Origin: Mytilus trossulus
Taxonomy: Eukaryota
Direction of reading: 5' to 3'
DNA: 64,000 nt
NCBI RefSeq assembly: GCF_036588685.1
Contig: NC_086377.1
Coordinates: forward strand, 20,212,001 to 20,276,000
Shown: positions 14,063 through 43,863 of the stretch, one piece after another
Layout: each line of letters opens with the position of its first letter
Numbering within the stretch: the stretch's first letter is position 1
Made by a program: the position numbers and the translations under genes
Notes under the pieces: generated by a model
Seen by the model: only the letters and a program-made list of their open reading frames with translations
Told to the model about the DNA's origin: nothing
Database searches by the model: none

Positions 14063-17000
14063 ATAACAAGACTACAAGAGCTGTTCAGAGGACGATTTAC
14101 GTTTCAGGAAACACAGTCACTTTTCAACCATTTCCATGGAGATTGTCTGGCAGCTGCTAATTTTGTCATCGATGGTAAATAAATTTATTTTTATTGAAAA
14201 CAAAATCTATATCATGATTGTGAAAAACATTTATATATGGTATAGAAATAACGTACATGAAGTTAAGATTATTCTGGTTTTGATTCATATTAGATTCATT
14301 ACCAGAAAAGGTAGTTATATTTTACTGATTTATTAGGACAGACTAAATGTTTATGGGTGAAATAGATCCATGTATCTATTATTTTTATTTTTTTCCTCCT
14401 GTTTAAATTAACCACATTCAATAGTTTACCCCTCCCCCTTTTTCAATGAAATCTACCCAAGTGGGCCTCTTGTTTAAGTCAAAATTGAAAAACTACCCAA
14501 AACTTTTTTATATTGAAGAATTTGCTACAATACAACTATCTCGACACTAGAAAGACCACACCTTTCTTTTGTTTGGCTATACTGGTCTTTATACATGCCT
14601 ACTTTATCATGGTTTTTAGACTGTAGTTGACCCACCAGTGCATATAAAATTTGAAATAAAATTCAAGAAAAAACAAAATGAATAATCAAGTTAGTGTTTT
14701 GGTAAGAATATGTATTACTTGTCACACCTAATCACAAAAATCCATGTCATGATGGATAGTTTTTAGAAAAATTCTACTTTTTAAACAAATTTTTAACCCA
14801 AATATGGAAGTTTCAATTAACCATGCAGTGCCGCAGACAGAAAAAGAAGTATTCTAAAAACAGATGTTGGCATGACACGGGTTATGTTCTTCTCATATAT
14901 GTTATGATGGTATGATACTAAACCCCTAACGAGAAGGATTGTGCCTGATGTTCATATGATGAAATCATAATCTTTCAGTCAGTTTAATTGAAGTCTGGAG
15001 CTGGCATGTCAGTTAACTGCTAGTAGTCTGTTGTTATTTATGTATTATTGTCTTTTGTTTATTTTCTTTGGTTACATCTTCTTACATCAGACTCGGACTT
15101 CTCTTGACTTGAATTTTAATGTGCGTATTGTTATGCGTTTACTTTTCTACATTGGTTAGAGGTATAGGGGCAGGGTTGAGATCTCACAAACATGTTTAAC
15201 CCCGCCGAATTTTTGCGTCTGTCCCAAGTCAGGAGCCTCTGGCCTTTATTAGTCTTGTATTATTTTAATTTTAGTTTCTTGTGTACAATTTGGAAATTAG
15301 TATGGCGTTCATTATCACTGAACTAGTATATACTTGTTTAGGGGCCAGCTGAAGGACGCCTCCGGGTGCGGGAATTTCTCGCTACATTGAAGACCTGTTG
15401 GTGACCTTCTGCTGTTGTTTTTTTTATTTGGTCGGGTTGTTGTCTCTTTGACACATTCCCCATTTCCATTCTCAATTTTATTTACTGATAAAGTCATGTG
15501 TCTGCTGAAAATGTTTAAAGATTCGTCTTCATTTTCGTCGAACACACACAACAAATGACGCAAACTATCGTCGCCTTATGGAAGCTGGCGTGTCATGTTT
15601 AGGATTTTTTGTCACATTTTCGGAATCCTCTGGTTTTATCCATTTGAATGCCTTGAAAACAATTGCCTGGTGACCCGCACTTTTCTTTTTGTAAATCTTT
15701 TACATGTATAAAGATAAGCCATCTGTAAAAGTGTTATACATTTTTATTTATTCTTTAACAGTTTTTAAAAACTTCAACTCGTCAAGGATAATATTTTCCC
15801 GTCAAAATTTCAATGGCTAATACCTCGAAAACAAGCATAGTGACCTATATATATATTGCGCTTTTAATTTTTTTTTTATTAATACCCTATCAATATAAAC
15901 TGGTGTTTTGAAAAAAAGTATTTTTTTTGAAACTGATAAGCTAACTCCCTTAAATGGATTACAATTGTAATCAACGTAATAATTGTAAGTGTGTTGCTTA
16001 TTTTATGTTCAGTGGCAAATATTTATTAATCATGAACTTTTGACGAAGTCCATACGTTATATATACCTGCAAGATTTTTGTTAATGACCCATCAAAGTAC
16101 TTAAAAAAACAAGGCTTCGGATACGTACAATAACATTAGAACACATGATTTTCATATACAATTCAAATAATAAAATGCTACACTATTTACAATATTGCAT
16201 CATATCTAGATAAATTACATAATTACAATTAACAGTTTGATAAGGCTACGAGAGCTGTTAAAGTGGATGGAAGTTGGCACGTTCTACTGTGGTGAGACGA
16301 TGAAATGTTATTTTCTTTCTGCATTGTGTTACTACACTAAAGGTTGACGAATGTGTCTTATATTATATTATGCCCTTTGATTATGCAATCAATATACACG
16401 TTTTCTTTGCAGAAGAACCACAAAGAGTCAGAGATGTTATTGGCACCGAAAATGAAACGGTAGGATTATTTTTGTGCATGTTTACAATTTTCTAAATAAA
16501 TAAATTTATATTCAGGAATCCTGAAGTTAAATGGTCTATGCTGACGTGCGATGTCCCCTCGATGGTCCCATCGCTGATGTGCAATGGTCCATTTGACCCT
16601 AACTACAGTTTGATACTAAATGAGAGATTGATCTCAGTAATTTAGCTGTGTGTGAAAATAATTCTGCTGTGAAAGTTTGTCCTTGTTTACTTCTTCTCTT
16701 GGAATTCCTGTGTACGGGATACAATTATTATATTATGTAGATATAAACAAAAAGATGTGGTATGATTGCCAATGAGACAACTCTCCACAAAATACCAAAT
16801 CAACATAGACATTTACAACTATAGGTAACCGTACGGCCTTCAACAATGAGCAAATCCCATACCACATAGTCAGCTATAAAAGGCCCGGTAAGGCAATGTA
16901 AAACAATTCAAACGAGAAAACTAAGGGCCTCATTTATTTTTAAAAAATGAACGAAAAACAAATATGTAACACATAAACGAACGACAACCACTAAATTATA

Positions 17001-20000
17001 GACTCCTGACTTTGGACAGGCACATACATAAATAATGTGTCGGGGTTAAACATGTTAGCGAGATCCCAACCCTCCCCTAATCTGGAACAGTGGTATAACA
17101 GTATACATAAGAACGAACTAAAAAAATAGTTGAAAAAGGCTTAACTCACCAGATTAATGCATGTTTGCAATTTTTTAAATAAATAAATTTATATTCAGGA
17201 ACGCTGAAGTAAAATGGTCTAAGCTGACGTGCGATATCCGCTTGATTGTCCCATCGCTGATGTGCATGGACCATATGATCTTAATTACAGTTTGACATGA
17301 AACGAGAGATTGCTCTCAATAATTTTGCTGCGTGTGAAAACAATTCTGCATAGATGTTTGTCTTTGTTTACTTCTTCTTTTGGAATCAATGTTTACAGGG
17401 TGCAAGTATTATATAACGAAGATACTAAAAAGATGTGGTATGATTGCCAATGAGAAAACTCTCCACAAAAGTTCAAAATAACACAGATATTCACAACTAT
17501 AAGTCACCGTAAGGCCTTTAACAATGAACAATGCCCATACTGGATAGTCAGCTATAATGGCCCCGCATGGCAATGTAAAACAATTCAAACGAGAAAACTG
17601 AAGGCCCAATTTATGTTTACAAAATGAACGAAAAACAAATATGTAACACATAAACAAACGACAACCACTGAATTATCATGATTATAGACTCCTGACTTTG
17701 AACAGCCACATACATACATAATGTGGCGGGGTTAAACATATTAGCGGGATACCAACCCTCCCCTAACATCGGACAGCGGTATAACAGTACAACATAAGAA
17801 CGAACTTTAAAAATCAGTTGAAAAATGATTACTCCATCAGATGGACAAAAATACAAGTAAACGTGACCGGGTACTTGTACATCCCAACAACAAAAATACA
17901 CTAGGAACAGATCTGGGAGTATGTGGATCTTTATGTATCTGTTAAGAGAATACCACGATCCTTGTAAGTAATAAAGAAATGGCATTCTGTAGAAAATAAA
18001 AGGATCATCAGTATAAAAGATTCCCCTCGATTTAGAAATCCCCTTTCTAGCAAAGCCCATACCGCAACCCATAAGAGGTTCCGAAATGATTTGTCTCGTT
18101 TTATAGTTTGCTATCTGAAAACCTACCATGCTTTTAAGTTATGGTAATAACATGTAGTTTTTGATTTAATGAAACAACAACTTTTGCATGCACGTCTGTG
18201 GTTGTCAATTTCAGGACGATTGTACGAACAATAGCCTTATTCATGAAACACAATCTAAAGTAACAACTGGCACTTCTCTTTTAGATTTCCTTTCTCTTCC
18301 TTTTTCTTTTTCTTGTAAGTATTATACCATTCTCTGTTAACAAATAAATCCATCTGTGATTGATCGAACACTAACTCTAGAGGACCTGTCAAGTTCATGG
18401 TAAATGGAGATTTCTCTGTACAACTTATCACATGCATGATTATAAAAGATTCTTATATAACAACGTCATTGGTCAAACGTCGTAGTACACAAGATCAGTC
18501 AAATATGACATAATTTTGTTTTGATATAGGAGGCGGCTACTCACAAGTAAATTTTAATAAACGTAAAATTTATTATTATGAAAGTTTAACAGATGACATT
18601 AACATCGTAAGATCGGTGTCGTTATAGTCAATTTGTATCTTCTGTGCGGATTTTTACTTGTCGTTCCTTCTTTTTTTTCTGTTGTCATGGTCATATGCGA
18701 TTACTACTTGGACATTTGGTTTGTAGTTGATACCTTTTATTGTTGTCCTTTGTTTGGTCTAATAAAATGTAATCGGTTACTATTGTAAAACGAAACATTC
18801 GCCTGTAGTTAATGACATTTATCACTTATTTTTTCTTCCAATTTGGACAGTTTCTCTTATTTTGTTTTTTATTTCTAGTGGCAAATTGTTGCAAATAACC
18901 ACAATTGGAACAACCTTGTGCGACAAGGAATTATCCCAAAACAGGAGAGACAGTTTGCATGCGGACCATGTGATAACGTTTGGTGGAGAAAAGTTCCAAG
19001 TCGAAAGCTGGTATGTTTAATTTAGTTGAAAGTGTTTTGCAAGAAGCAAATGTTTATTTATTTTAATCTGTGTCTACACTATGTAATTAAAGGACCTATA
19101 ATTTTGTCGTGATATTGTTGTATTTGTGCCATAACATGTCTGAAATGGACTATTGCTATAGCATTAAAAACTTAAATCACAAAAATACTAAACTCTAGGA
19201 AAATCTAATTGGAAACTCCATAGTCACATGCGAGAAATGTCATATTCCTGACTTATTACAGGCATTTTCAAATGTAGAAAATGGTGGATTAAACCTGGTT
19301 TTATTGCGCCTAACCTCTTCTTTAAATTTTGTGTTCGTCTAGGACCAAGGAATTGCAGATTGGTAGGATGTAACATTTTTTTACAAATGATGTATGCTTG
19401 TTCGAAGGACGATATGGTCCAAATAGTATATAAATTGCGAACAAATTTAAATTTTTGAAGTATTAATGATGGTTAACCCAGGATAAATAACTACCAAAGT
19501 TAAATCTGACAATCTCTTTCGGAACAAGAACATATCAACAATAAACCAATAGGTAGGTGAATTGACAGACCTTTCTTTCTTCAGTTCGAAATTTGATCAG
19601 ATATTCTGCATTGAAGAATCGTTATGATAAAGTATACATTTAGTTTTCCGTCTTACATAGTCGTTTTAGTAGCATTTACTGTAAAGTTCACGGTCAAATT
19701 GAATTACATGTGTGATATCGTGTTTTATTTGCACTGCTTTTCGCATAAGTGAAATGCAACCCTATATTAAAACGTTGATCTTATTCATTGTGAAAGATGA
19801 ACTGTACACTAAACTCATTATATTATCCAAATTGCTAGCTCTACTATACTTTAAACCAGGTATCAACATGTATGCTGTGTAATACAAGATATGAAGCTGT
19901 ACCAAAAGAATATGAATGGGGAAGAGCAAAATATCGTTGCCAATTTTGTGGAAATGTCTTTATGTATGTATAAAAAATCAACAATATAAATTTTAGATTT

Positions 20001-21500
20001 TCATTAGATTTCGTGGGATTGAAAAAGTATAACAGTAGTAGCTCGCTTCAAGGGTAATTCAAAAGAATATTGAAGGTCATACAAACTGACATTATCAAAC
20101 ATTAAACTTGATCCAAACACAGAGAAGTGTATGCGTTATTAACTAGCAATATTCATAATTAAAGAATAACAATTTCTGAACATTGTTAAGTTCGACTACT
20201 TTACGTCTGTACAGTTAATTTACTTTATACAATATAACATGCTCAGTGGTATGCTGCGCATACTCTTTTTATTTTGAACATCTAAATAACATACCTTTTG
20301 GAAAGTTTGTATAATCGAAACTAATGTCCAAATAGATCTATAATATTTCCTTGTTATTCATGTTGTTGTAATACAGAAAATTCTGAGTTAATAAAGGGGA
20401 GAAATTAATGAAATTTTACAATGAAGAATGGGTAGAACCTTAACGTATAATGTTTCATCCATCATTTCAGAGGATTTGGACAAATGGGAATCGCTTCTAG
20501 TTTGTGTTACAGATGTCAAACTGCTTGTGCTCCATTGGAAATCCTACCAGGACGACAAAGAACTGAAGGAACCCCATCGAGAAATGTCCATTCATGTCTT
20601 TGTCATAGTTGTTTTAATCGTGCAGGTATGTTTTCAATAAGAAGCAACTTCTTGTTCATTTAGATATTTTGTTTTCAACATCTTTCCAAATGGCATTCAA
20701 AACAGTAACATTTACATAATATTACAAATATGAACATACTCTAAGCAAACATAAATAAACATTATAAAGGTATAAATTGCATATGAAATATAAATGAAAA
20801 CAACACATTATATATTTCATGCATCCGAAGCTTTTTTACGGATTTACCATCAACAAAAAATACGATCAGATCCGAATCTTAGAATGCTTAATAGCATAAC
20901 TAACAGTTGGTTAATTACCCGTTATAACTGTCATGCTTTAGAAAAACTTCCTCAACATCGCATTCATAAAAACTGCAAGAGCCTAAACTTTCATACGCTA
21001 GAAATATGATTTTGATTCAAGACTGTCATATATGACAATCCTTTTCATTGTTTTTATCCATTCATTTAATGAGTTTGACCTTTTTTTTTGCACTTTAATC
21101 AGGGACTTTCAGTTTTGAATTCAGTATTTTTTTTTATTTTACTTTATTTTACCAGCAAATTCCAAGAATTTAGAACTTTTTAGTAATTTGTTAATTCGTT
21201 TTTTTTTGTTAAATATAATACAAATCAAATTATATTTTAGATATTAATTTAGACACATATGCAGGTTTGCCAAATCGTGATTGACCTCGTCTTATTTTTT
21301 GAGTGTATAAAATCTATATTTCAGATGGACATATTATAGAAGCATCCTGTGTGCATCCTCGATCATTGGAAAGGCAGGTAGTTTATGCTAGCCTTCAACA
21401 CTTCAGTAGTGGATCCACAGTTGATACTTTCTTAACACAAGATGACCTGGCGTCCCTGGCTTCAGATTTTGAACCAACTTTATCAGATATTGATGAATAA
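14063..21500 (+). CDS. SHFL: Shiftless antiviral inhibitor of ribosomal frameshifting homolog, copy A (multi-exon)
   Basis: Six GT-AG exons with matching phases: 14063-14174, 16413-16459, 18879-19010, 19860-19963, 20471-20625, 21325-21500 (TAA). They give an uninterrupted 241-aa frame: [109 protein letters not shown]. These motifs match human SHFL/C19orf66 as recalled (RQFACSSCDHVWWRRVP, GWAQMG, CAHPKS, HISSGSTV). The first coding exon is uncertain (candidate ATG at 13762). Confidence 0.9.
14860..15482. repeat. Dispersed non-coding interspersed repeat
   Basis: Its 3' part (GCTGAAGGACGCCTCCGGGTGCGGGAATTT..TTGACACATTCCCCATT) recurs at about 62277-62410. Small ORFs here are spurious. Confidence 0.6.
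16476..17920 (+). repeat. Diverged tandem duplication of about 680 bp in a SHFL-A intron, each unit containing a SINE-like repeat
   Basis: GCATGTTT.CAATTTT.TAAATAAATAAATTTATATTCAGGAA near 16476 and 17159. Each is followed by AAGATGTGGTATGATTGCCAATGAGA (about 16752 and 17430). The same family occurs at about 57820-58190 and, inverted, at 42840-43030. Confidence 0.8.
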
Positions 21501-24159: not shown

Positions 24160-24790
24160 TTAAGAAATAATTCATGGGGGCTTGAATATATCGTGATTTT
24201 ACCACGGGTTGGCCCTTTATGACAAGTATTTTACCCTGAGCGATAGCGAGGGTTAAAATATCGGCATAAAGGGACAACCCGTGGTAAAATTTAGATATAT
24301 TCAAGCCCACATGAAATATTTCGATTCTAATAGGACAAATACGGCAATTATTTTGGATCGAAGCGCTCTAGGTGATGGCATTTTTTGCCGTTCCAATAAA
24401 TAAACGCACTTTTAAATTGACGTAAAATAACAGAGCAAACTAAATAAATGATGATGCTCAAACTATTTATAATAACATATTTAGATAATTTTAGACGAAT
24501 CTAATTATTAGTGTACTTATATGTTTCATATGTATACAAACATGGCTTATATAACTCATTTTAGCATCATCTGTTTACGTTTCCATGTTGTGATGATTTT
24601 CCGTTTCACAAGCGTGTATTTTCCCGTAAATTGCATATATATGCTGACGTCATTGTTCTATGACGTCGAGTAGCTTATTCATAAAAAAAAACATATGACG
24701 TGGGAGAATAATCGGAACAGCCCTTACAATATATTCATATTTTACCACGGGTATGTACTCAAAGCGTTTTATGGACGTCATGTTAGAATA
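24160..24790. mobile_element. Crypton-like non-autonomous hairpin element
   Basis: Inverted arms of about 68 bp (24169-24317) around the loop GAGCGATAGCG, followed by a domain bounded by TTCTAA..TTAGAA. Family assignment is from recalled Crypton-like architecture. Confidence 0.55.
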
Positions 24791-25025: not shown

Positions 25026-26733
25026 ATGGCTTCATCATCGGAAGAGTTTTGTACGCTCTGTGGACAGCTCCATATAACAAAAGTAGCTGAAATATGGTGT
25101 TATGACTGTCAAGATTATCTTTGTTCTGATTGCCGAAGACCTCATAGTGTTTCAAAATTGTCTAAACGACACACTTCAGTTGCAATTGACGAGTACAGGG
25201 CATTTCCAGCCTACATCCGATCAATTAAACACGTCTGTATGGAACACGACGAGCAGTTTGATTCTTTCTGTCGAACACACAACGTTACTTGTTGTAGAAA
25301 GTGCATATTTTTAGAGCACAAATCTTGCACAGACGTATCACTCTTTGAAGAAACGACGCTAAACACCTTACACGCAACAAAATTATCGAACACAGAACAG
25401 GGCGTACACGATGTCAGAGAATATATACAAAAAGTAAAGAAAGACCGGGTTAATAACAAGCGAAAAATTTCAAAACAAGAACAATCAGTAAAAGAAGATA
25501 TAAATAAAGTTCGTAAAATAATAAATGACCGCCTTGATGATATTGAAAAGACGACTTTGAGCGAACTTTCTAAAGTGGTGCAGACTGAAATCAAAAGCAA
25601 TGATCGATCTATAAATACATTAGATACGATCGAAACTGATGTTACAAATTTATCACACAACGTTCAACTTTTGAGAGAAAATGCAACCAATATGCAAATT
25701 CTTGTAGGGATTCAGGCAATAGATACATCATTGGTGTCTGCTGAACGAAATCTAGAGACTTTCCGAAAAGAAGGAAATACAGATATTAGATCAATCATAT
25801 TTAAGGCTGAAAATGTTGACACCATTCTTAAAGATGTTAATACCCTTGGTACTTTAGAAATTTCAAAAACATCAAGTGGTATTGATATAACTGAGACCAA
25901 TTCGGCACAAGCGCAGATTGTCCCAATACCTTCAAATACGCATTCTACAGTTTCTCTGCAATTAAATAAAATTATTGAAATCTACCACACGGATTCGAAT
26001 TATTTGATATGCGGTTGTACATTCTTGACCAATCACGACGTGTTAATAGGTGAATTTACACGTGATGGTTACTCTAATCAATTGTTTTGGGTCAATAAAC
26101 GAGGGTATGTCAAACGATTACAAGTTGAGAAAGGCACTCCAATATTTGATATAGAAAATGTGTCGAAAGATGGATATACAATTGCAATCTCTACCCGAAG
26201 TAATAAAGTTTTTCTTTTAAATTTGACAAATTCGAAAATTACAGAAATACCAGTTAATGGCAAAACAAATGGCATTTCATATCACAATGGTACACTTTAC
26301 TGTTGTGTATCACCCAAAAGGAATTATTAGCCTGAACATTGATGATGAATCAACCAATGCGTTTGATCTCCTTCCGTATAGTTGCAAATTATACTCGTAC
26401 ATAGCAATTTATAATGACCATCTTTACTATACGAAAACCGAGACAAGTATTGAGTGTTGTGATACAAAAGGAAACGTTATATGGACTTTCGAAGACACAC
26501 ATATCTTAAAGCAACCACGTGGTATAGTCGTCGATAAAAATGAAAATATCTTTGTAGTCGGTCGGCGTTCTGCAAATGTGGTAGTTATATCAGCAGATGG
26601 TAAAACATGCAGAGAAGTTTTAAATAGGGATTCTGGACTGAGTTGCCCTAGAGCTATTGCATACGACAGGCAATACAATAGATTGCTCGTTTGCAACAAT
26701 AAATCGAAGGCTTTTATTTATGATATTGTGTGA
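25026..26733 (+). pseudogene. RING-less TRIM-like protein (two B-boxes, coiled coil, NHL/beta-propeller repeats) with one frameshift (pseudogene or assembly indel)
   Basis: ORF 25026-26330 has B-box1 (CTLC..CYDCQDYLCSDCRRPH..H), B-box2 (CMEH..FCRTHNVTCCRKC..H) and a coiled coil. ORF 26257-26733 continues in the +1 frame with NHL-like blades (LKQPRGIVVDKNENIFVVG, LSCPRAIAYD..RLLVCN). The frame switch is near 26310-26320. A splice acceptor (catag) lies just before the ATG. Confidence 0.8.
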
Positions 26734-29985: not shown

Positions 29986-32690
29986 TACTGGGAAATGTTT
30001 TGTTTCAAACATTGTAAACCAACACAAAGGAAGAACTAAACGACATTTGATTGAAAGGACAAATTACAAAAACAAAATGAAAAGAGAGAGACCAAAAACA
30101 AAAAGATAATATAAAGTACTGCTAATGTTTTGTGACATGTCGTCAGACGGAGTAAAATTGATATATACTGCAGCTGTGCTATTTGAGCAGTCAAATTGCA
30201 TTGACTGTATATTTATATGTGATATACAGTCACTATAGCCGTGTATCACCTTGTTTATGACGTTAACAATGCTTTTCCGTACAGTGTTATTTATGACGTC
30301 AATAAAACATACAGGTTCGCGGCAATTTTACGTTGTCCGCTCACAATTAAAGAGTGACCTTTTTGTCCCTAAATACCTCATTTTGAACAGTTATAAGAGT
30401 TGCAGTATATATAGAATAACCATACAATCTCTAAATATCAATCTGTTATTTGTACTCGGCTCAAAACAGGTAGAAATGCTCGGCAGAGCCTCGCTTTCTA
30501 CCTGTATTTAAGCCTTGTACAAATAACATTGATATTTCGAGAAAATGTATAGTTATTCTATATGTACAATGATATATATGTATTCTTGTTTTTCCTTTTG
30601 GTATTATACAACCGAAAACAAAAGATCATCGTTTCAAGAAAGTTTAACAGACATACAGACAACAGTCAGTGTACAGATACGATCGTTCCTATTTTTGACA
30701 CGATCTCATACATGTGACATACTTTTAGTTGTTGGTGTCATGCTTTTTCTATAGAGTGTCAACATGCCATTTTTGTTTTTCTTTGTTTACATAATTTCAT
30801 AGTGATTAAGGTTAAAACACAAAGTTGACTGTTGTACTTCAATTTTGACAATAGTACCAATTATGTAAATTTTGTGGCAACTTATTATTGTCAGTAATAT
30901 AATTAAAAGTGACTTTCATACATGTACACATGAGACGTTTAGCTAGTAATAAAATATCATCATTTACATTTTATCTATTTTACAATTCGATGGTGTTGTC
31001 AACTATTGTTGGAAGAGTATAGCATGAACTATAAGTACATTTAATTTTGGACAGCAATATTTAACTGATAAACTATACGAGCATCAGTTAGAAGGTAGAA
31101 GTTAGATACGATATTTAAACAAGAACCTTGAAATGAGAACAAAATGTTAAATGTATTGATTTGAAATGATCAAATGTCATCGTGCCTATTTAGTAAAATT
31201 TATTCTTAAACAATTCTTAAATGTGTTTTGTATGAAATTCAAAACAATTGGTAATATTTAATCGATGATAAACTGCAGACAAGTATTTTATTTATATGTA
31301 AACACAAAACAGGAAATAATGTTATCTGAACAGATATGATTTTATGGTCAACATAAATGGAGGACAACGAACTTGAGGTATTGTTAATTTGTTTTCGTAG
31401 TGCAATTTTCGTTCATATTATATATTATTTTTATCCTCCAATAGGATATTAGATAAAGTATATTTAATTCGCGCATGTTTATCCATACTAGATAAAAGAA
31501 AAAGATAAATGATTCAACATTGCTATTAATACCAACTACGTTCTTTTGCACAGGTAACACCTGTTCTATTTTACATGTACATGTACATTTATGTAACTAT
31601 AAAGATAACAATATGTTAGGCTGAGATATCATACATAACGTGTATAGATGTTATATGATTTGCATGTCGATAGATGTAGAAATACTTTCCCTGTTGACGA
31701 ATCAGTCTCGAACGTTTGCTTTGTTCACTCTATTTCCTTGGGTGTTGAAGATCGAAAACCAGGACAACGTTTACCTTATTTCATTTAAATTTTCAAAGAC
31801 TTGTTACTTTAACTTGAGTCGTATCATTATTTCCATTACAAGTAATATCAAAATCAATTAACGTGGTACACATAGTTTGCTCAATCTCAATGATGACGTC
31901 CAATTTCAGTTTGTTTTTCTCTGTGTAATGACAAAAACGACACAAGTAGAGGGGTCGAATTTAAGTTTTTTTGTGTACTGGCCAGCCGGATCAGTGAACT
32001 GAAACTCTACTGGTCCGGCTCCAAATCTACTGGTTCTGCAAAAATGACATTAATTTTACAAACACTTATATTAACGACAGTTGTTTAATTTTGATGCTTT
32101 CGTTTCCATAAGTTAGACAGTAACAAAGGAATAGTCTTTATTCTGATTTTGATAAAGGCTTTGGTAATCTCAATGATTTTCTTTATCAAAATTAGGATCA
32201 AGGACAGAAAAAATATCAACATTGTCTTCTATGTCATCGCAATCCTCACGACGACCATAGGGTGCCTGACTAGGTCTTCTGGAGCGCTGTCCAGAAATAT
32301 TTCACATTCCAATAGCCGGGACTGGATCAAATGATGCTATATCTTCACTTTGAAACATAATGAACAAACGATCTGATAGAACAGTTGGACGCAATTTTGA
32401 TTGCCAATCTTTCTTTACAAGTTTCATCTCAGAAAACCCCCATTCTGCATCACCAGAATGAGCAGGAAGCAAATGCACTTGTCTCAGAATTTTTTTTTCT
32501 ATATACCTTAATATATTTTTTCTTCTTAGACAAGTGCCTGTGGCAGGAAGGGACAGGATTAAATTATCTTATTTTTTGTCCGGCGGTTTAACTCCTTCTA
32601 AAAATTTCCACATTTTATATTGTTGTGAAGGACGCATACCCGAGATATTAATTAACTTGATCAATTGTAATATCCCCCAATACCGTGTAA

Positions 32691-35600
32691 GTAAGTAAAA
32701 GTAAGTAAGTAAATTATTTATTATAGTGACATGTGTAAATATGTACAGATTAGAATTATACAATATATGATAAATATCAATACACCCGCCCCAATGGACC
32801 TATAAGTCACCTCAAATGAAATTAAGTAATTTTAAAACAATATATCACGTTCTTCAAAATAACAAATTATTCATGAAATTATCTTTTTGTTGACGAAATT
32901 TAACCTTTAATTAATTTTAAAATAAAAATACATAAATATTAAGCTATTTGTAAACAAAATTTCGTCTTTTAGAATATGCCTGTACAATGTATTTGGCTAG
33001 TTTTCGAGTATGGCTAATATTTAAAAGAAAAAGTTTTTCATTAATGTTCATAGAAATAAAGGAAGTAGTTAACAAAAGTTCACCAAAAACATGTTCTCGT
33101 ATATCAGAATAGAATGTACAGTCTAGTAAAAAATGAGTTTCAGTTTCTGACACGTCTGAAGTGCAAAATTTGCAAAGTCTTTCTTCTGGTCTTTCAACTA
33201 TATATCGTCCTGTTTCTATCCTCAGAGGTAATATTCCACACCTGAATTGTGCTAAATGTGAGCGTTCGACTTTGGTTAAATTAAATTTTACATACTGTTC
33301 CTGATTAAAGACAGCTTTGAAAGTTACATAGGTACGAAGTTTTGGTACTTGTTGTATATTGTCATTCCATATGTTTGAATAAAGTCGCTGAATGTTCATT
33401 TCTACAGTTTTCAAATTAACAGCTGTTTTTGAATCAAAATAATGTTCTAGATGAAGTTTACAGAAAATGTCCTTCAATTCGCTACACCAATTGTCGGTAC
33501 GAAGTTTTGGTACTTGTTGTATATTGTCATTCCATATGTTTGAATAAAGTCGCTGAATGTTCATTTCTACAGTTTTCAAATTAACAGCTGTTTTTGAATC
33601 AAAATAATGTTCTAGATGAAGTTTACAGAAAATGTCCTTCAATTCGCTACACCAATTGTCGGTGCATCGGTTATAGTCTGCATTAAAAGCGATCTTCGTT
33701 ATGCGATCATCTTCAAACTTGACTAGTCTGTTCCAATACCTCACCATGTTTGTCCATCTTCGAAACTGGCTAGGGACCCATCCAACATCACCATGTAAGG
33801 CGAGAGTAGGCGCAAAACGGTGAACACCAAGAAAATATCGTATTGTACGGTTTTGAATATTGTCTATTGTTTGAAATTTTCGGTATCCCCAGACACTTGA
33901 GGCGTAATCTAAGATTGGAACTACACACGAGTAATACAGTTTTTCGTAGGCATTGAATCCGAAGTCTTTATTGTTGTGAATTTTAGATATGATTGTTCCT
34001 AGTGCTCTTCCACCGCCATTTGACTGTTTATCATTGACTTGTCCATGCCGAGGGTACTGAATTTGAAACAGAAGCCTACTTTCAAAGTATCACTAGTCTG
34101 ATCCAGCAAGATCGGTATTATTAAAGGTTGCTGGTTTAATAAAAGAACATTCTTATTCTTTTCATTCTAGGATTATGCTGAAAATACTATGAATGAACTT
34201 CTTGGCTTGTATGGTTATGACAAATTTTCGACATTGGTTTTGAAATTTCCGTTATGACTGAATGTAATCCCTAAATATTTGTAATTTTCAACCTTCTCCA
34301 ATTTGTTTTTACCAATTGTAAATTCGAAATTAGTTTCTTTGGTTTTTGGTTTTCTGAAATGAATACACTTGGATTTATCTGTTGTTTACACCATTGGTGA
34401 AGTGTATTCAGCATACACTGAAGATCCTCAGCCGACTTTGCAACTAACGCTATATCATCCGCATACAATAATAATGATAACTTCGTTTCAAGTAAGTCAA
34501 CCCCAAGATTAAGGTCATTAATTTCTTGTACAAGATCGTTTATAAATATGGAGAACAATGTCGGGGATAAATTATCTCCCTGTTTCACACCAGTTTAACA
34601 GCAGCACCACGATGTTAGTTTACCGTTTATACGAACACAGGACTCAGAACTTTGGTATATACTTTTGACAGAGTTGTATAACTTCCCATCAATTTTGTTC
34701 AGCAAAAGTTTGTATAACATCATATCCCTGTCAATAAAATCAAAACATTTCTTCAGATCGATGAATGCAACAAATACTGATTTATTATTTCTTATAACAC
34801 TATTCAAAGTAAATATATGGTCTTCACACGATCTGTTTTTTCTAAACCCATTTTGTTCGTCGGCAAGAATATCATCGTTATCAAGATTACTGACGAGCCG
34901 TTGATTAATAAAAGAACTATACAATTTGCTAGTGCACGACAATAGACTTATACCTCTGTAGTTCATTGGTACTCGGAGATCTGATGACGGGTCCTTCAAG
35001 ATTGGACATATGATGGCTTTTCACCATATGGTTGGAATTATACTGGTGTCAAATATTAGTTGGAAGAGCTGTTGTAATGTTTGAATGATTATTGGGTACT
35101 TTAAAACGCCGTATGGAATTTGGTCGGGTCCACCTGCTGACTTTGATTTTGCATGCATTACAATTTTAGTTATTTCGTCAATCGTAATATTAGAGTTTAA
35201 ATTTTCATTCGGCATAAATAACGGATCTTCCATTTCAGATTCCAATAACTGTTTGTGAACTTTTGACTGATTATAATGGTCGTTTTAAAATTCTATGTTG
35301 TTTTTCCCGTTGTAAAGATTTTCAAAATCAATACGCCATTTGTTAAGTACGTCCTCCTCGTTTGTTAAGATTTCCCCAGATTCATCAACGACTTCCATCG
35401 GAATATCCTTTACTTTTCGAGGACCAAGCTTTCTGATCTTTTCCCAGAATTCATTAGGATTCGTTGTTACCATTGTTTCAATATCGACTGCCATAGCTTT
35501 CTTGTATGTCCGTTCTGTTCGTCTAAGATTTTTATCAAAAACATCTCTCGCTTGACTGTACTCGCGTCTGATAGCTGATTTAACACTTCGATTTCCGTTA

Positions 35601-38017
35601 CACTGTATAAATTCATTTTCTTTATGTCGCATATCATTCCATAAATTCGTTAGGTTATCATTCCAATATGGTTTCCGGTTTTAAAGTCTTTTGTTAGCTC
35701 TATCATATCCAGTTTTAGGTATTTTTTCGTTCATTTCGGTTAAAATTACAGTGCACAAATTGTCATAAATTTTGTCTACATTACCTTGGGTTTCCCTACA
35801 TCGCTCAATTGTTTCAATTACCTCAAATAGTGCGGACCTTCTTATATCACTTGACATGAAATCTAACGGAATGCGATCAAGCATGAAACGCAGTTGACAG
35901 TTAGTTTGGTCTTTAATCCTATACGATAGTCCATGCTGCGTAACATTAAATTCACACATAATAACCGAATGGTCAGGTAATTTTGATTTGTCACCAATTA
36001 GATCTAGCAACATATTGTCGTTAATAATTGACTGAATAGTTAACACCTTGAAGTAATTCAAATAATCGTAAATATCCTGCGGGACGCATATATAATCTAC
36101 TACGGCTTTCCCTTTTTTCGATATTGAGGTAAAATTGTCGTTAGGGAATCTTCCGTTGAGTACACAAAATTTGGCTTCATTCAGAAAATCTAATACTTCG
36201 TGTCCGTGCTGGTTAATACTTTTGTCTATCGGGTGTCTTTTTGGTAGATTATCGATATAATACAATGTTTCCGAAAGACTTCCAATTCGTGAATTAAAGT
36301 CTCCTATCAAATATATTCCATCATTCTCGTTATTCATGTATATTTGCGATAATAGATGTGCATAAAAACTTTGAGCATCACGGCCTCTACTTGAGTTCTC
36401 GGGAGGCAAAACACACGCAAATACAAGAAATTCAAATTCTGTTGAACGGCCGGTAAACTTAATTCCAAGAATTCCATCAAATGACTTATCAACCACGGAG
36501 ACATTAAAAAGTTCAAGTAGCCAGTTTTTTACAAGTACCCCGACTCCACCAGATGCTTTAGGTGCCTTTTTGTGTATTTTCAATCTGTTAAAGCCAAACC
36601 ATGTATACCCAGGGACACAAATATTATCTTCGTTAGTAAGATGAGTTTCACATACGGACATTATATCACAATTAGTTGCTTTAATAATTTCAATTCTCAA
36701 TGTACTGTTTTCATTAGTCCATCCACAAACATTTAAATGACAGAGTTTAATGGAGTCAATAGGCCGGGTGGGCTGCTACCGGTGATCAGTTTCTTGGGTT
36801 TCAGGTTGTGTAGTTGGTTGAAGATTTCTCGATTTAATGTGTCCGTTTGCATCAACACGTAGACTTCTTGCTTGAGCATTAGGTAGATTACGCAACACTG
36901 CATGGGCATTCATTTCGATCAAGCGTTCTATTCGAGATTTACTGCTTTTTATGTAGACTTTATTGTATATGGCATTGTCTTTTAGTTTCATTTTGTTTCT
37001 CAGAACTTGTACCTTTTCATGCGTGCTTCGAAAGCTTATTTTCACGATTCCTGGTCTGTTGGTGGATCTTGTTGGTAAGCGTACCGCACCAGTTACTCGA
37101 ACGTTCTGGGTAACCTCATCTCCAAGAGCGGAAATTAAGCTCTCGGCTTTTTGTATCAAATTTTCACCTTCAGTAACCGGAATACCACTGGCTGTTATTG
37201 TTATTTCATTGTTATCTAACGGGTTTCAGGGTTGAACTGTAGATAATATACCGTTATCATTACTGTTTAATAAGTGAGAGTTGATCTGTTTTCCTTGTTC
37301 TTCAACATTGTCTATACGTGATTGAATTGACTGAATGGTATTAATTATTTGATCGGTTCGGTTAGTTTCTCTAGCAAGATCTAGTGATATTTCATCACGA
37401 AGTGTTCTAATTTTGTTGTCAACACTAGCAATGAGATCAGTTTTCAGTTTGTCAAGTTTAGACTCAAACATGCGTTTCATACCCTCTTGACCAACTTTCA
37501 AATCTTGAACAACTTTTATTAATGTATCTAGTTTATCGGAAACGGGGGAATCGACGTCTGCTTGTTTTTGTGGGTTGCTGCTTGATGCCATTTTTGTTTC
37601 TTTCGTGTTCGACTTTGGTGTCTTTGTTTTCTTTGGTGGTTTGGGTGTTGATGGATTTAATTTATCAGAATATAAATCAGCGAATACACTGTTATCAAGT
37701 TCATCAAATTTCCCACTCGAGTCGTATAATATAGAGTTAGTTTGATTCAACAATTCACTCACCGATATACTGGTATCGTGATTACTACTCGTAGGGTCCT
37801 CGGGTTTGAAATGTTTTGGTTTACAGTCTTGTTGTGAATCACTACCACTACTGCCCCTGTTCCCTTTTTTTTCATTTATTCTGTTTCTCTTTATCCTTTG
37901 TCATTTATGAGTATTTGACCGTGTTTTTGTTCACAATAAAAGGTCCATATAATCACATTTTAGAATTTCAGGAGAGTGAAAAATTTACACGTCCATTTTA
38001 CATAAGTCACGTGATAA
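32691..38017 (-). mobile_element. Full-length decayed LINE with 9-bp TSD
   Basis: ORF1 37762-36776 (frameshifted). APE 36700-35681 (CETHL, GGVG, GDFNSR, VDYI, PDH). RT 35632-34271 (NYRGISL, QNGFR, QGDNLSP, YADD). C-terminus to 32944 (LRIETGRY..CKFC..HFLLDC). (TTAC)n tail at about 32691-32710. TSD ACCGTGTAA at 32682-32690 and 38018-38026. Confidence 0.92.
34025..34217. mobile_element. 193-bp insertion in the LINE ORF2, solo-LTR-like
   Basis: Splits the peptide ..VENLS|NGGGRALG.. and is flanked by a TGAC duplication (34021-34024, 34218-34221). Starts with TGT and contains AATAAA, but ends TA rather than CA. Confidence 0.5.
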
Positions 38018-40365: not shown

Positions 40366-43300
40366 ATCAAAAAGCTAAGAGAGTTGTTCAGAGGACGATT
40401 TACGTTTGAGGAAGCACGGTCGCTAATTGATCATCACCATGGAGACTGCCAGGCAGCTGCTAATTTTGTACTTGATGGTAAATACTTGTGTTTCTGCTTT
40501 TTGATTATACTTAATATGAAATAAGCTAACAAGGCACTTAAAGTTGCACGGACAGGCTTTATTGTTAATAAATTCTAATTATTAAAGGACATGTTTGGCA
40601 GAGTTTGCATAGCGAGCGCTAGTCATCTGATTGAGACTAGAAATATATCTCCTACCTTAATTATTCACTAAAGAATGATAGCAACAAAAACATTGTTAAC
40701 AGAAAAGTGCGGTTTAAAATTTTTCTTTTTATTACAGTAATGTTTTTCTTATGGTTAATGTTTAACAATATAATCTTAAAAAGGAACTTATTGTAAGGTA
40801 ATACAATAATTGAATTTCAGAGGAGCCAGTAACAGTTAGATATGTAATTGGGACGGATAATGATCTGGTGAGTGTAGCTGGATATAAATGTTTTCGAAAA
40901 TTCCAAACTATTTATGGTAATTCAAAGAACTGTAATATATTATATTTTTTTTGTAATTTTAATCAATGAAACCAAAAGTCGTATATAAGAAAGTTGCATA
41001 TTATGACACAGAGGGATATAAGTAAAGTAAGAAAGAAGGAAAAGATAAATACACTGATACTATTTTGTCCTTTTTTGGTAGGATTTCGAGTTTTGAGAGT
41101 CGAGACTCATATCTACAATATCAGGATATTATGACAAAATATCAAAGTTCAGTTCACCAAATGTATGTATCAAGTCAGCAATATGGCAGTTGTTTGCCCT
41201 TATTCCGTTGATGTGTTTACTTTTTTGAATTTGCTTTTGAATCTTAGAATAAATATGTAAAATCTAAAAGATATTACAAAAATGTAAATGCTCACAAGTG
41301 ACAAATTCTGACTATCATGATTTTCTGTTTATGTATTATCAAGCTTTCTTACATCGAAAAATTTTAATATAACAGTATTTTATTGTAGTGGCAAGTTGTT
41401 ACAAATAATCAAATATGGAAAGACTTAGTACGACAAGGAACTATTCTAAAACAAGAAAGACAGTTTGCATGCAGCGCGTGTGATAACGTCTGGTGGAGAA
41501 AAGTTCCAAACCGGAAGCTGGTAAAGTTTTTAGAGCACTGGGTCCTGAGATGGATTTGGCTACTTCAAGGGTTGTGTTTAGTCAGATAACTCAACTGTTC
41601 TTATTTAAACATTGATTTTCTTTTTAACAGTTGTATACTACTGTTGCCTTTATTCATACATCATAGTCATTCAAATATTCGACTTTGAGCGTTCATCATG
41701 AAAGTAAATCCAGAAAATCGATTTGGATTCATAAAATACATAACGTATTGTTTCCATTTTATACATTCTTTACATAATTCGCTCAGTACTGTACATTGTG
41801 AAATGTCATTATTTCACGATCGCGTACTGTTTGCGTCCTAGCAGTGATAAACGTTGAACACTCTTAGTATACCCTTCTTAACACTACGTGCAGGTACAAT
41901 ACAGTGAATTCGATCCATTATCGTAAAAACCAGAAAGAATCATAACATTGTATTAATATATTTGTGTTACGCGCGGCACGTAGATGCAAAATATTCAGGT
42001 TTCAATTTTTACAAAACAGGTTTCTAAGTGTGTGCGATGTAAGATACGATATGATGCTGTACCGACAGAATACGAATGGGGAAGAGCTGAATTGAATTGC
42101 CAGTTTTGTGGAAATGTCTTCAGGTATGTCAATTATTTCTGTAACATTATAACAAGTTGTTAATAAGCATGATAAGCTTGATGTAGAGCTAGTTTTCTTA
42201 TTTTATCAAATTCAAATTGATAACTCAAAAAACAGAAACTGTTTAACGAACTGCACATGTTTCCTTAATTTTTCTCTCGAGTTCTTTACCTTTGAACTAA
42301 GTTATAAAAAAAACTATTGTAACAGTGAGATTATTGTCGTTGATCGGTTCTGTTATGGAACGATGGTGATATTGCCGAAAATCAAGCATACGTTTGTAAA
42401 TATTTTTCTTCGATTTTCACGGTCAATACTTTAACACTGTTCCAAGCATCTTTTCACTTAAAGGTCTGTTTATACTTGCAGTAAACAAGAGTCACCACAT
42501 AGCTGCTCATCATAAGAACTTAACATAGATATCTTTAAACATTACATGTTTAAATTAAAGACCCATTGTTCTTCAATAAATTACAGAGGGTTTGGACAAA
42601 TGGGAGTCGCTTCAAGTCCTTGTTACAGATGTGGCACGGTATGTTCGCCGAAAGCAATCATACCAAGACGGAGGTTACAAGGAAAAAGATCCAGAAATGT
42701 TCATTCATGTTTCTGCCGGAACTGCTTTAATCGAGCAGGTTTGTTAATTGACACTTTATCGTTACAATGACCTACTAACGTTCATTCACGTCCAAAATTA
42801 GGCAATACATCATTTAGTTGATACAATTGGTGTTTTTAGCAGGTAATATAGACGTATGTTGGTTTTCCCGTTGGAATGATTTAACACTTGTGATTTTTGG
42901 GACCCTTTATATCTTGATGTTGTGAGCCTAGGCTCCGTGTTGCAGGCCGTACCTTAAACTATAATGATTTACTTTTATAAATTGTTTCTTGGATGGAAAG
43001 TTGTCTCATTGGCACTCATACCACATCTTTATCAATCTATTTTTGATAATTATTTAAGTGTGACATTAGTTGTTACAATTGATAATTCAATTAATATTAC
43101 GTAATGTAAACTTGGGTGATCATTTGAGTGCGCATAACACTAGTTGTTACAAGTTAATTTACTTTCTTATTTCTCATTATGCAGACATTTTGAAAATTTG
43201 GATACGTCAATAAAAAAATCGAACGTGTTGGTATAAGTATCAAATATTAACTGTGTGGTTGGTTTTATTACAAAAACATGATTAACCATTTGTGTAACAA

Positions 43301-43863
43301 AACTCAATGCAAACAGTAGTGTCAACTGTTTCATTATATAATTACTGAACAGATTTCCTTTAAATAAATCATTGCTTACTTTACTCTTTAAATACAACTT
43401 TGACATGCAATAAACATGTGATAAATAAGATTTGTTTAACAAAAGAATCGTATAATAAGTTGTATTCGTTACATGACCTTTGATTATTTATACAACATAT
43501 TAAATGTTGTTTTCTAAACGGTCATATAAAGAAACACTTTATTTTCTACATTTTGTCAAATATTTTATTAATGATATTTCTTTAATGCCTCTTTCAGTTT
43601 TCGAAATGTATTTTTTGTTATCAAATCTGAGGTCATAGTTGTTAATCTCAGTTTCAATTGATCCGTACTTTATTTCATATGTTTTAGATGGGCCTATTTT
43701 TGAAGAAACCTGCGTCCATCCACGTTCATTGCACCGGCGTGTAGTGCATGCTAGCCAACAACACTACAGCTCCGGATCTACAGTTGATACGTTCTTAACA
43801 CAAGATGACTTAGCTTCACAGGTTTCTGATTTTGAACCAATATTATCAGATATTGATGAATGA
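40366..43863 (+). CDS. SHFL: Shiftless homolog, copy B (multi-exon)
   Basis: Exons 40366-40477, 40821-40867, 41389-41520, 42020-42123, 42587-42738, 43688-43863 (TGA). Same phases and sizes as copy A except exon 42587-42738 is one codon shorter; 240 aa: [74 protein letters not shown]. Candidate first coding exon 39818-39838 (MQIDEFD followed by GT). Confidence 0.92.

What the first reader, a model, noticed from the sequence alone, without database searches (positions are those of the whole stretch)
14063..43863. Candidate invertebrate antiviral locus: two intact Shiftless (SHFL) paralogs flanking a RING-less TRIM gene
Seen: two co-oriented SHFL-like genes with identical exon phases and no internal stops, 19 kb apart, with a B-box/coiled-coil/NHL-like gene between them. 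Established: human SHFL is an interferon-induced RNA-binding protein that suppresses viral -1 ribosomal frameshifting and is single-copy, and many TRIM proteins act in antiviral immunity. Inference: this is a duplicated, possibly co-regulated translational-surveillance module in an invertebrate. The small exons hide it from ORF-based annotation.
Basis: partly seen in the sequence, partly recalled or inferred. Interest (0 to 1): 0.85.

Follow-up and report, generated by a model that had tools for sequence, protein, structure and literature searches.

The report
Two annotated Shiftless genes in mussel
A mussel chromosome carries two intact copies of the antiviral gene Shiftless with a B-box/NHL gene between them, but public databases already list both copies under that name and nothing shows that the three genes work together.

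Summary
Two same-strand SHFL (Pfam UPF0515) genes lie in the window, with a RING-less B-box/NHL gene between them.

- Gene A therefore spans 12359-21500 (248 aa) and gene B spans 31357-43863 (247 aa).
- The gap from A's stop to B's start codon is about 9.9 kb, not 19 kb.
- A decayed LINE-like retrotransposon sits in B's first intron.
- The B-box gene has one frame break as assembled.

All 14 exons are exact pieces of two RefSeq proteins on the same 88-Mb Mytilus contig. Both are named [quoted passage not shown], so the genes are not hidden from annotation.

The copies are old duplicates: 177 of 244 residues are identical, dS is 0.79 and dN/dS is 0.21. Both keep all 12 zinc ligands and the phospho-loop of human SHFL.

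The order SHFL, B-box, SHFL recurs in M. edulis, and SHFL and B-box genes are numbered consecutively in M. galloprovincialis. These are close relatives, so this shows inherited gene order, not a functional module.

Several other molluscs also carry multiple SHFL copies. Antiviral function, induction and co-regulation remain untested. Interest is low to moderate.

The parts
12359..12379 (+). SHFL gene A, first coding exon E0 (start codon plus 6 codons; the 5' edge of the exon and the UTR are unknown)
   Evidence: The ATG-to-GT mini-frame is paired with an almost identical one upstream of gene B. It is the conserved block in alignment A2. It is an exact match to residues 1-7 of RefSeq record P0171.
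14063..14174 (+). SHFL gene A exon E1 (N-terminal helical, UBA-like part)
   Evidence: AG/GT sites and phase. Exact piece of P0171 from residue 8. No Pfam hit on its own.
16413..16459 (+). SHFL gene A exon E2
   Evidence: No Pfam hit on its own.
18879..19010 (+). SHFL gene A exon E3 (first knuckle of zinc finger 1; phase 0-0 exon)
   Evidence: PF15135 at 35.2 bits, profile positions 90-130..
19860..19963 (+). SHFL gene A exon E4 (second knuckle of ZF1, first knuckle of ZF2)
   Evidence: PF15135 at 36.9 bits, profile positions 128-163..
20471..20625 (+). SHFL gene A exon E5 (second knuckle of ZF2, three ligands of ZF3)
   Evidence: PF15135 at 52.1 bits, profile positions 161-216..
21325..21500 (+). 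SHFL gene A exon E6 (last ZF3 ligand, phospho-loop motif, acidic tail, stop codon)
   Evidence: PF15135 at 26.1 bits, profile positions 215-260..
25026..26733 (+). Single-exon B-box / coiled-coil / NHL-like propeller gene without a RING. One frame break as assembled: a 434-aa frame and a 158-aa frame that overlap.
   Evidence: ORFs. B-box Pfam hit at 35.5 bits with 2 stretches, and weak NHL/propeller hits. 5 of 5 homologues are collinear across the frame change, as is P0168. The closest relatives are Mytilus 'B box-type domain-containing' proteins of 546-567 aa.
31357..31377 (+). SHFL gene B, first coding exon E0
   Evidence: exact match to residues 1-7 of P0180.
32944..37762 (-). Decayed LINE-like non-LTR retrotransposon inside intron 1 of gene B, antisense to the gene. 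It is a neighbour, not part of the gene's coding sequence.
   Evidence: Endonuclease (PF03372) and reverse transcriptase (PF00078) pieces. 5 in-frame stops in the 810-codon endonuclease-to-RT stretch, and at least one frame change before the C-terminal piece.
40366..40477 (+). SHFL gene B exon E1
   Evidence: Weak UBA_4 hit, E 0.054.
40821..40867 (+). SHFL gene B exon E2
41389..41520 (+). SHFL gene B exon E3
   Evidence: PF15135 at 35.0 bits..
42020..42123 (+). SHFL gene B exon E4
   Evidence: PF15135 at 41.1 bits..
42587..42738 (+). SHFL gene B exon E5
   Evidence: PF15135 at 64.1 bits. It was the query of the representative search..
43688..43863 (+). SHFL gene B exon E6 with stop codon
   Evidence: PF15135 at 27.1 bits..

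Best explanation
The locus holds two old, intact, same-strand paralogues of the Shiftless (SHFL / C19orf66 / RyDEN; Pfam UPF0515) gene in a Mytilus mussel. Each has seven coding exons.

Each protein has an N-terminal helical bundle, three zinc fingers that are each split across exons, a Ser/Thr phospho-loop and an acidic tail. This is the architecture of human SHFL.

Inferred, not shown: both proteins are zinc-dependent RNA-binding proteins that act on translating mRNA and ribosomes, as human SHFL does. That activity may be tuned by phosphorylation of the conserved loop.

The two copies have been kept by purifying selection since before the split of M. californianus from the M. edulis group. 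Copy A has lost the basic residues of the ZF1 knuckle, which hints at some division of labour.

The B-box/NHL gene between them belongs to a RING-less TRIM-like family. It carries one frame break here. I read its position as inherited gene order, not a demonstrated functional partnership.

The genes are already annotated in RefSeq under the Shiftless name.
For: Identity as SHFL:
- PF15135 hits exon by exon.
- For the matching database records, PF15135 at 179 and 191 bits against a 29.8-bit cut-off.
- The only PDB sequence match is human Shiftless 9kbo, at E 1.6e-39 and 4.6e-42.
- An AlphaFold model of the gene-A record has pLDDT 83.2 and pTM 0.71. It gave 4 Foldseek matches at E <= 0.001, and all 4 are chains of 9kbo, with TM 0.61.

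Intactness:
- Canonical splice sites and CDS lengths of 747 and 744 nt.
- All 14 exons are exact, ordered pieces of RefSeq proteins P0171 and P0180. They cover 245 of 248 and 244 of 247 residues; the rest are split codons.

Conserved functional residues:
- All 12 zinc ligands are kept in both copies. The ligands are named in passages of PMC12716391: C112, C115, C132, C135 for ZF1, the four ZF2 cysteines, and H203, C205, C210, C223 for ZF3.
- The phospho-sites S249, T250 and T253 are identical, and S256 is Thr.

Age and constraint:
- Nucleotide similarity between A and B is confined to exons, at 72-82%.
- 177 of 244 residues are identical, dS is 0.79, dN is 0.17 and dN/dS is 0.21.
- A groups with M. 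californianus XP_052059159 and B with XP_052059161, in 499 and 500 of 500 column bootstraps.

Already annotated.

ZF1 divergence: at the positions of human R131, R133 and R136, copy A has no basic residue and copy B has 2 of 3. Across 32 family members, 29, 15 and 24 have K or R at those positions.
Against: - No expression, induction, RNA-binding or frameshifting data exist for any mollusc SHFL in what I could search.
- E1 and E2 gave no family hit on their own.
- dN/dS is an average over both lineages, so it cannot show that each copy is constrained today.
- In the paper on the human structure, RNA-binding affinity and frameshift inhibition did not correlate across the charge mutants (discussion passage). 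The loss of basic residues in copy A may therefore mean little.
- Mussels lack a known interferon, so vertebrate-style regulation cannot simply be transferred (recalled knowledge, not from a call).
Confidence: 0.85

Rival explanations
1. One reading: the two SHFL copies and the B-box/NHL gene form a co-regulated antiviral module in which an E3-like TRIM protein and two frameshift suppressors act together.
For: - The order SHFL, B-box, SHFL recurs in M. edulis in two independent annotations, and SHFL and B-box genes are numbered consecutively in M. galloprovincialis.
- All three genes are on the same strand within 32 kb.
- Many vertebrate TRIM proteins are antiviral (recalled).
Against: - The recurring order is seen only among very close relatives, where it is expected without any selection.
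- In M. californianus and in the window's own genome the two SHFL accessions are separated by at most one number and show no B-box protein between them. This is weak evidence, because accession order is only a proxy for position.
- The B-box gene has a frame break here.
- The B-box gene has no RING, so no E3 ligase activity is expected from it alone.
- There is no shared upstream sequence beyond the start-codon exon of the two SHFL copies.
- No ISRE-like site lies upstream of any of the three genes.
Confidence: 0.1
2. The mussel SHFL copies are housekeeping ribosome or mRNA quality-control factors, not immune genes. The antiviral, interferon-linked role would then be a vertebrate addition.
For: - The family predates interferon. 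Homologues are named in bivalves, gastropods and cephalopods.
- The core zinc fingers and the phospho-loop are conserved from mussel to human.
[quoted passage not shown]' (title seen only).
- No ISRE-like motif was found upstream.
Against: - Repeated lineage-specific duplication is more typical of defence genes than of housekeeping genes. Examples: Mytilus has 3 types, Argopecten has 4 names on one contig, Gigantopelta has 3.
- An Octopus maya transcriptome table lists the homologue among immune-type annotations (one passage seen). This is annotation only.
Confidence: 0.3
3. The frame break in the B-box/NHL gene is an assembly error, and the gene is intact in the animal.
For: - The two frames meet at a short run of identical bases.
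- Both halves remain open and 75-86% identical to intact relatives.
Against: - The run is only 3-4 bases long, which is short for a typical homopolymer error.
- No B-box protein accession lies between the two consecutive SHFL accessions of this genome (weak).
- The RefSeq M. edulis relative is also shortened, at 491 aa against 546-567 aa.
Confidence: 0.35

Closest known systems
RefSeq XP_063438555.1 (248 aa) and XP_063438556.1 (247 aa), 'shiftless antiviral inhibitor of ribosomal frameshifting protein homolog [Mytilus ...]'
   Same: Every exon of gene A and gene B is an exact piece of these two records. They lie on a contig of 88,129,055 nt, the same length as the contig of the window's own ORF.
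   Different: Nothing in sequence. They are the same genes, already catalogued. The species name was cut off in the tool output.
Human Shiftless (SHFL/C19orf66/RyDEN), crystal structure 9kbo
   Same: - Same Pfam family.
- Same order of helical bundle, ZF1-ZF3, phospho-loop and acidic tail.
- 12 of 12 zinc ligands are kept.
- 3 of 4 phospho-sites are identical and the fourth is Ser to Thr.
- Foldseek TM 0.61, probability 1.00.
   Different: - About 32% identity.
- Shorter (247-248 aa against 291 aa), with a shorter linker between the helical bundle and ZF1.
- Two linked copies plus a third divergent one in Mytilus, against a single human gene (the single human copy is recalled).
- Copy A lacks the basic ZF1 residues.
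- Interferon regulation cannot be assumed.
Mollusc SHFL homologues: Ostrea edulis, Saccostrea, Mizuhopecten, Argopecten irradians, Ylistrum, Gigantopelta aegis, Argonauta hians
   Same: Same family and the same collinear exon content. They are 45-55% identical to the window genes. Several species have more than one copy on one chromosome-sized contig.
   Different: The window pair belongs to a Mytilus-specific duplication. A third Mytilus paralogue (P0166 and P0167) is as distant from the pair (48-57%) as the oyster genes are.
TRIM-NHL proteins (for example vertebrate TRIM2/3/32/71; names recalled)
   Same: B-box, a coiled-coil-like middle and a C-terminal NHL-like beta-propeller.
   Different: - No RING in the window gene or in intact relatives.
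- Single exon.
- One frame break here.
- The closest named relatives are uncharacterised Mytilus 'B box-type domain-containing' proteins.

Membership tests
SHFL / UPF0515 (PF15135) | Significant match to the family profile above the curated cut-off | tested here: met
   - Exon by exon: 6 of 12 exon frames scored above 29.8 bits, 2 more scored 26-27 bits, and 4 gave no hit.
- Matching database records: 179.4 and 191.2 bits.
SHFL / UPF0515 (PF15135) | Three zinc fingers with their 12 ligands (ZF1 CCCC, ZF2 CCCC, ZF3 HCCC in human SHFL) | tested here: met
   All 12 ligands align to identical residues in both copies. The ligand list comes from passages of PMC12716391.
SHFL / UPF0515 (PF15135) | Phospho-loop Ser/Thr motif (human S249, T250, T253, S256) | tested here: met
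   Both copies have S, T, T and T at these positions. The motif columns are invariant or nearly so in 32 sequences.
SHFL / UPF0515 (PF15135) | Fold like the solved human protein | tested here: met
   The model of the gene-A record has pLDDT 83.2. It gave 4 Foldseek matches at E <= 0.001, all chains of 9kbo, best E 1.1e-18, TM 0.61. Copy B was not modelled.
SHFL / UPF0515 (PF15135) | Basic residues in the ZF1 knuckle, reported as important for RNA binding (human R131, R133, R136; review PMC9230503, passage seen) | tested here: inconclusive
   Copy A has 0 of 3 basic and copy B has 2 of 3. K or R is present in 29, 15 and 24 of 32 family members at these positions. This is not a family-defining feature.
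SHFL / UPF0515 (PF15135) | RNA binding, ribosome association and suppression of -1 frameshifting | not testable with these tools
SHFL / UPF0515 (PF15135) | Induction by antiviral signalling | not testable with these tools
   No expression data are held. The ISRE-like motif gave 2 matches in 64 kb against 0.96 expected, and neither lies upstream of a gene start.
TRIM (RING, B-box, coiled-coil) | N-terminal RING finger | tested here: not met
   No RING hit in the 434-aa frame or in the intact relatives P0168 and P0005. 5 of 5 homologues start at the same Met.
TRIM (RING, B-box, coiled-coil) | B-box zinc finger(s) | tested here: met
   PF00643 at 35.5 bits against a 24.1-bit cut-off, with 2 stretches.
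TRIM (RING, B-box, coiled-coil) | Coiled coil after the B-boxes | tested here: inconclusive
   Only weak helical or coiled-coil profile hits below their cut-offs (CdvA at E 0.01). No dedicated coiled-coil predictor was run.
TRIM-NHL subgroup | C-terminal NHL-repeat beta-propeller | tested here: inconclusive
   In the window piece, NHL scored 19.4 bits against a 20-bit cut-off and SBBP scored 20.7 against 20.5. The relative P0005 scored 26.6 bits for NHL.
TRIM-NHL subgroup | Uninterrupted reading frame | tested here: not met
   There is one frame change relative to 6 homologues. Whether it is real or an assembly error is open.
Non-LTR (LINE-like) retrotransposon, in the intron of gene B | Apurinic-type endonuclease plus reverse transcriptase on one strand | tested here: met
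   PF03372 and PF00078 pieces. The element is decayed, with 5 in-frame stops and at least 1 frame change.

The most novel reading that the evidence does not exclude
In an animal without interferon, a lineage-specific pair of Shiftless paralogues has split its work, one keeping and one losing the basic ZF1 RNA-binding patch. Together with the linked RING-less B-box/NHL gene, the pair forms a conserved, jointly induced defence island against RNA viruses that rely on ribosomal frameshifting.
Probability: 0.07. Interest if true: 0.6.

Novelty: already known. Interest (0 to 1): 0.25.

Why it matters
SHFL is studied almost only in mammals. The structure paper describes it as conserved "from zebrafish to humans" (PMC12716391, passage).

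This locus shows that the full architecture is kept in a mussel: the helical bundle, three zinc fingers and the phospho-loop. It also shows that molluscs repeatedly duplicate the gene. That makes bivalves a reasonable place to ask what SHFL did before interferon existed.

The genes themselves are not a discovery. They are in RefSeq under the Shiftless name. The module idea rests only on gene order shared by close relatives.

Tried and rejected
First coding exon:
- I first ranked mini-frames upstream of each gene by likeness to oyster and scallop N-termini. This gave nothing convincing.
- Pairing candidates between the two genes found the true exon. Mytilus proteins then confirmed it.

Recent duplication: rejected. 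The introns do not align and dS is 0.79.

Third SHFL copy or second B-box gene in the window: none was found by tblastn.

Regulatory motif: an ISRE-like pattern gave 2 matches against 0.96 expected, and 30 of 100 shuffles reached 2. One match lies inside exon E2 of gene A and one inside the retrotransposon, so the scan is uninformative.

Rfam: 0 matches in the window.

Literature:
- Searches were badly designed. With min_terms set to 2, the bivalve words matched each other, so these calls say nothing about SHFL.
- The informative searches were:
  - C19orf66 + oyster, 2 papers held and 1 listed, a herpesvirus host-shutoff review that I did not open.
  - shiftless + mollus, 2 papers. I opened one of them, and there the two terms are unrelated.
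  - SHFL + Mytilus, 0 papers.
  - 'repressor of yield of', 10 papers. One is an octopus transcriptome table entry.
- No study of a mollusc SHFL was found in the held library.

Open because of limits:
- No eukaryotic genome collection is on hand. Synteny outside Mytilus, and the true gene order in M. californianus and M. coruscus, could only be guessed from accession numbering.
- One search listed 120 of 228 hits.
- All 3 word-index protein searches and the single representative search were used.
- Supplements are closed, so fig. S1 of PMC12716391 (species alignment) was not seen.
- I did not use the viral and prokaryotic contig scans. They cannot inform on a mussel locus, and the viral scan could have fetched animal viruses.
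- The species name of the window's RefSeq records was cut off in the output. By recall the accession range may belong to M. trossulus, but no call shows this.

Full report
WHAT IS THERE

The window is 64 kb of AT-rich DNA, about 32% G+C, with no N. On the + strand I read two sets of six short open frames. They have canonical AG acceptors and GT donors, and matching phases.

I searched them one exon at a time in Pfam. Exons E3 to E6 of both genes hit PF15135/UPF0515, the Shiftless family. That is 8 of the 12 frames searched.
- The hits fall at collinear profile positions 90-130, 128-164, 160-216 and 215-264.
- 6 of the 8 are above the 29.8-bit cut-off. The two E6 frames scored 26.1 and 27.1 bits.
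- E1 and E2 of both genes gave no family hit on their own.

THE MISSING FIRST EXON

The same holds at 40366. Oyster homologues align from their residue 14 to these points, so a short first coding exon had to exist.

Ranking candidates by likeness to oyster N-termini failed. Pairing ATG-to-GT mini-frames between the two upstream regions gave a 7-codon pair at 12359-12379 and 31357-31377. The two differ at one residue and have the same donor hexamer. They form the only well-conserved block in an otherwise poorly alignable stretch. Mytilus SHFL proteins of 247-248 aa start with exactly these residues.

The resulting models:
- Gene A spans 12359-21500. Its CDS is 747 nt, giving 248 aa.
- Gene B spans 31357-43863. 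Its CDS is 744 nt, giving 247 aa.
- B's first intron is 8,988 nt and contains a LINE-like element.
- The true distance from A's stop to B's start codon is 9.9 kb.

ALREADY ANNOTATED

A phmmer search with one exon (B-E5, 50 aa) against 1.84 billion representatives gave 28 hits at E <= 0.001. [quoted passage not shown] The named species were Ostrea, Argopecten, Gigantopelta and Argonauta.

A profile search listed 228 family members, of which the best 120 were shown. A search with a Mytilus fragment listed 16.

The second look-up returned P0171 (XP_063438555.1, 248 aa) and P0180 (XP_063438556.1, 247 aa). They lie on a contig of 88,129,055 nt, which is the contig length reported for the window's own B-box ORF.

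Every one of the 14 exons is an exact, ordered piece of these two records. They cover 245 of 248 and 244 of 247 residues, and the rest are the three codons split by introns.

So the genes are intact, and they are already catalogued under the Shiftless name. Two older gene models of relatives are faulty:
- One M. galloprovincialis record (VDI51849.1, P0010) has an N-terminus matching an off-frame reading of E3.
- One M. coruscus record (CAC5381432.1, P0008) fuses the last two exons to a transposase-like protein.

Whole-protein comparisons used the database records.

FAMILY MEMBERSHIP AND STRUCTURE

The two records score 179 and 191 bits on PF15135. Their only PDB sequence match is 9kbo, human Shiftless, at E 1.6e-39 and 4.6e-42.

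An AlphaFold model of the gene-A record was built from a 32-sequence alignment. It has mean pLDDT 83.2 and pTM 0.71. Foldseek against the PDB gave 4 matches at E <= 0.001, all chains of 9kbo. The best had E 1.1e-18 and TM 0.61. The next hit was at E 0.33.

Passages of the structure paper (PMC12716391) describe human SHFL as follows:
- a helical bundle at residues 1-101;
- ZF1, with ligands C112, C115, C132 and C135;
- ZF2, a CCCC zinc ribbon at residues 147-182;
- ZF3, with ligands H203, C205, C210 and C223;
- a phospho-loop with S249, T250, T253 and S256.

In the HMMER alignments both mussel copies keep all 12 ligands. At the four phospho-sites they have S, T, T and T. Each zinc finger is split across two exons: ZF1 over E3 and E4, ZF2 over E4 and E5, ZF3 over E5 and E6.

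At the positions of human R131, R133 and R136, copy A has three non-basic residues and copy B has two basic ones. A review passage calls these residues critical for RNA binding (PMC9230503). K or R is present at these positions in 29, 15 and 24 of 32 family members. This hints at divergence between the copies. However, the structure paper found no simple link between RNA affinity and frameshift inhibition among its charge mutants.

AGE AND CONSTRAINT

- Nucleotide similarity between the two genes is confined to exons E1 and E3-E6, at 72-82%. The other 4 of 9 blastn hits are short dispersed repeats.
- Summed over exon-wise codon alignments, 177 of 244 residues are identical. pS is 0.49, pN is 0.15, dS is 0.79, dN is 0.17 and dN/dS is 0.21.
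- Copy A is 96% identical to M. edulis CAG2197232 and 83% to M. californianus XP_052059159.
- Copy B is 89% identical to M. edulis CAG2197229 and 85% to M. californianus XP_052059161.
- This orthology assignment held in 499 and 500 of 500 column bootstraps.
- The duplication therefore predates the split of these species, and both copies have been kept.
- A third Mytilus paralogue (P0166, on a different M. edulis contig of 97,338,103 nt) is only 48-57% identical to the pair.

THE GENE IN BETWEEN

A single-exon gene at 25026-26733 encodes B-boxes (35.5 bits, 2 stretches), a helical middle part and a weak NHL/propeller signal. It has no RING. Intact relatives show the same make-up: P0168 has B-box and propeller hits, and P0005 has NHL at 26.6 bits. 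Neither has a RING.

As assembled, the gene is split into a 434-aa frame and a 158-aa frame that overlap. 5 of 5 homologues, and P0168, run straight across the change of frame. The change falls at a short run of identical bases. I cannot tell whether this is a real lesion or an assembly error.

Because a defining feature of TRIM proteins (the RING) was tested and not met, I describe the gene as TRIM-like, not as a TRIM.

LINKAGE

In M. edulis, four consecutive accessions on one 724,953-nt contig are SHFL-B orthologue, B-box, B-box, SHFL-A orthologue. RefSeq M. edulis has SHFL, B-box, SHFL as three consecutive accessions. M. galloprovincialis has B-box, B-box, SHFL, SHFL on one 64-kb contig.

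But these species are so close that shared gene order is expected anyway.

In M. californianus, and in the window's own genome, the two SHFL accessions are one apart or consecutive, with no B-box protein seen between them. For the window this fits the frame break. Accession order is only a proxy for position.

No tool here holds eukaryotic genomes, so linkage outside Mytilus is open.

SURROUNDINGS

- A decayed LINE-like element lies antisense in B's first intron, at 32944-37762. It carries endonuclease and reverse-transcriptase domains. The endonuclease-to-RT stretch has 5 in-frame stops in 810 codons, and there is at least one frame change before the C-terminal piece.
- A second LINE-like element lies upstream of gene A at 6467-10814.
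- Potassium-channel-like ORFs flank the locus.
- Rfam found nothing.

HOW IT LIKELY WORKS

Shown: two intact SHFL-family genes with all structural determinants of the human protein, kept under purifying selection.

Inferred: they bind RNA through the zinc fingers and act on translating ribosomes or mRNA fate, with the conserved phospho-loop as a regulatory switch.

Whether that activity is antiviral, housekeeping or both in a mussel is unknown. Repeated duplication in molluscs leans towards defence.

A joint module with the B-box gene is possible but unsupported. I put it at about 0.1.

LITERATURE

In the held library I found no study of a mollusc SHFL. The only mention is one table row in an octopus transcriptome paper (PMC6522055). 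Three searches were badly designed and are uninformative.

VERDICT

The identity claim is right, and the module claim is untested. The genes are already known to public annotation. Interest is 0.25.

Noticed in passing
window 32944-37762 (- strand): A LINE-like retrotransposon (endonuclease plus reverse transcriptase) lies antisense in intron 1 of SHFL gene B. It is decayed: 5 in-frame stops in the endonuclease-to-RT stretch and at least one frame change. Its C-terminal open frame contains a tandemly repeated segment of roughly 55 residues, seen in the translation.
   Followed up: partly
window 6467-10814 (- strand): A second LINE-like element lies upstream of gene A. It has a 377-aa endonuclease frame and a 414-aa reverse-transcriptase frame, and its five listed pieces fall in three different frames. 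A further weak RT fragment lies at about 1262-2301 on the + strand.
   Followed up: partly
window 3900-4541 (-), 47955-48461 (+), 53545-54363 (+), 63208-63810 (+): Three ORFs have the potassium-channel tetramerisation-type BTB_2 domain, and one has the Ion_trans and Ion_trans_2 domains. A small cluster of voltage-gated K+ channel-like genes therefore flanks the SHFL locus on both sides.
   Followed up: partly
window 16751-16798, 17420-17465 (introns of gene A); 40060-40116, 42994-43030 (gene B region, inverted): A short dispersed repeat of 37-48 nt, 85-95% identical between copies, occurs in introns of both genes in opposite orientations. It may be a miniature transposon. Adjacent longer repeated open frames lie at about 16496-16780 and 17179-17450.
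   Followed up: no
window 18879-19010 and 41389-41520 (exon E3 of both genes): E3 is a 132-nt exon in phase 0-0 that encodes the first knuckle of ZF1. An annotated isoform of the M. galloprovincialis orthologue (P0160, 203 aa) and an Ostrea edulis isoform (P0013, 201 aa) lack exactly this part. In-frame skipping of E3 may therefore give a natural short isoform.
   Followed up: partly
window 19860-19963 (gene A exon E4) versus 42020-42123 (gene B exon E4): At the three ZF1-knuckle positions that are Arg in human SHFL, copy A has no basic residue. It is the only one of 32 aligned family members with none. Copy B has two.
   Followed up: yes
related records, not in the window: Older gene models of the orthologues are faulty. 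In M. galloprovincialis VDI51849.1 (P0010), the first 46 residues match an off-frame reading of the E3 region. In M. coruscus CAC5381432.1 (P0008), a Mutator-like transposase domain protein is fused to the last two SHFL exons.
   Followed up: partly
window 40366-40477 (gene B exon E1): There is a weak UBA_4 (UBA-like) hit, E 0.054, below the cut-off. Scallop SHFL homologues carry a precomputed PF14555 UBA_4 domain at the N-terminus. The N-terminal helical bundle of invertebrate SHFL may be UBA-like.
   Followed up: no
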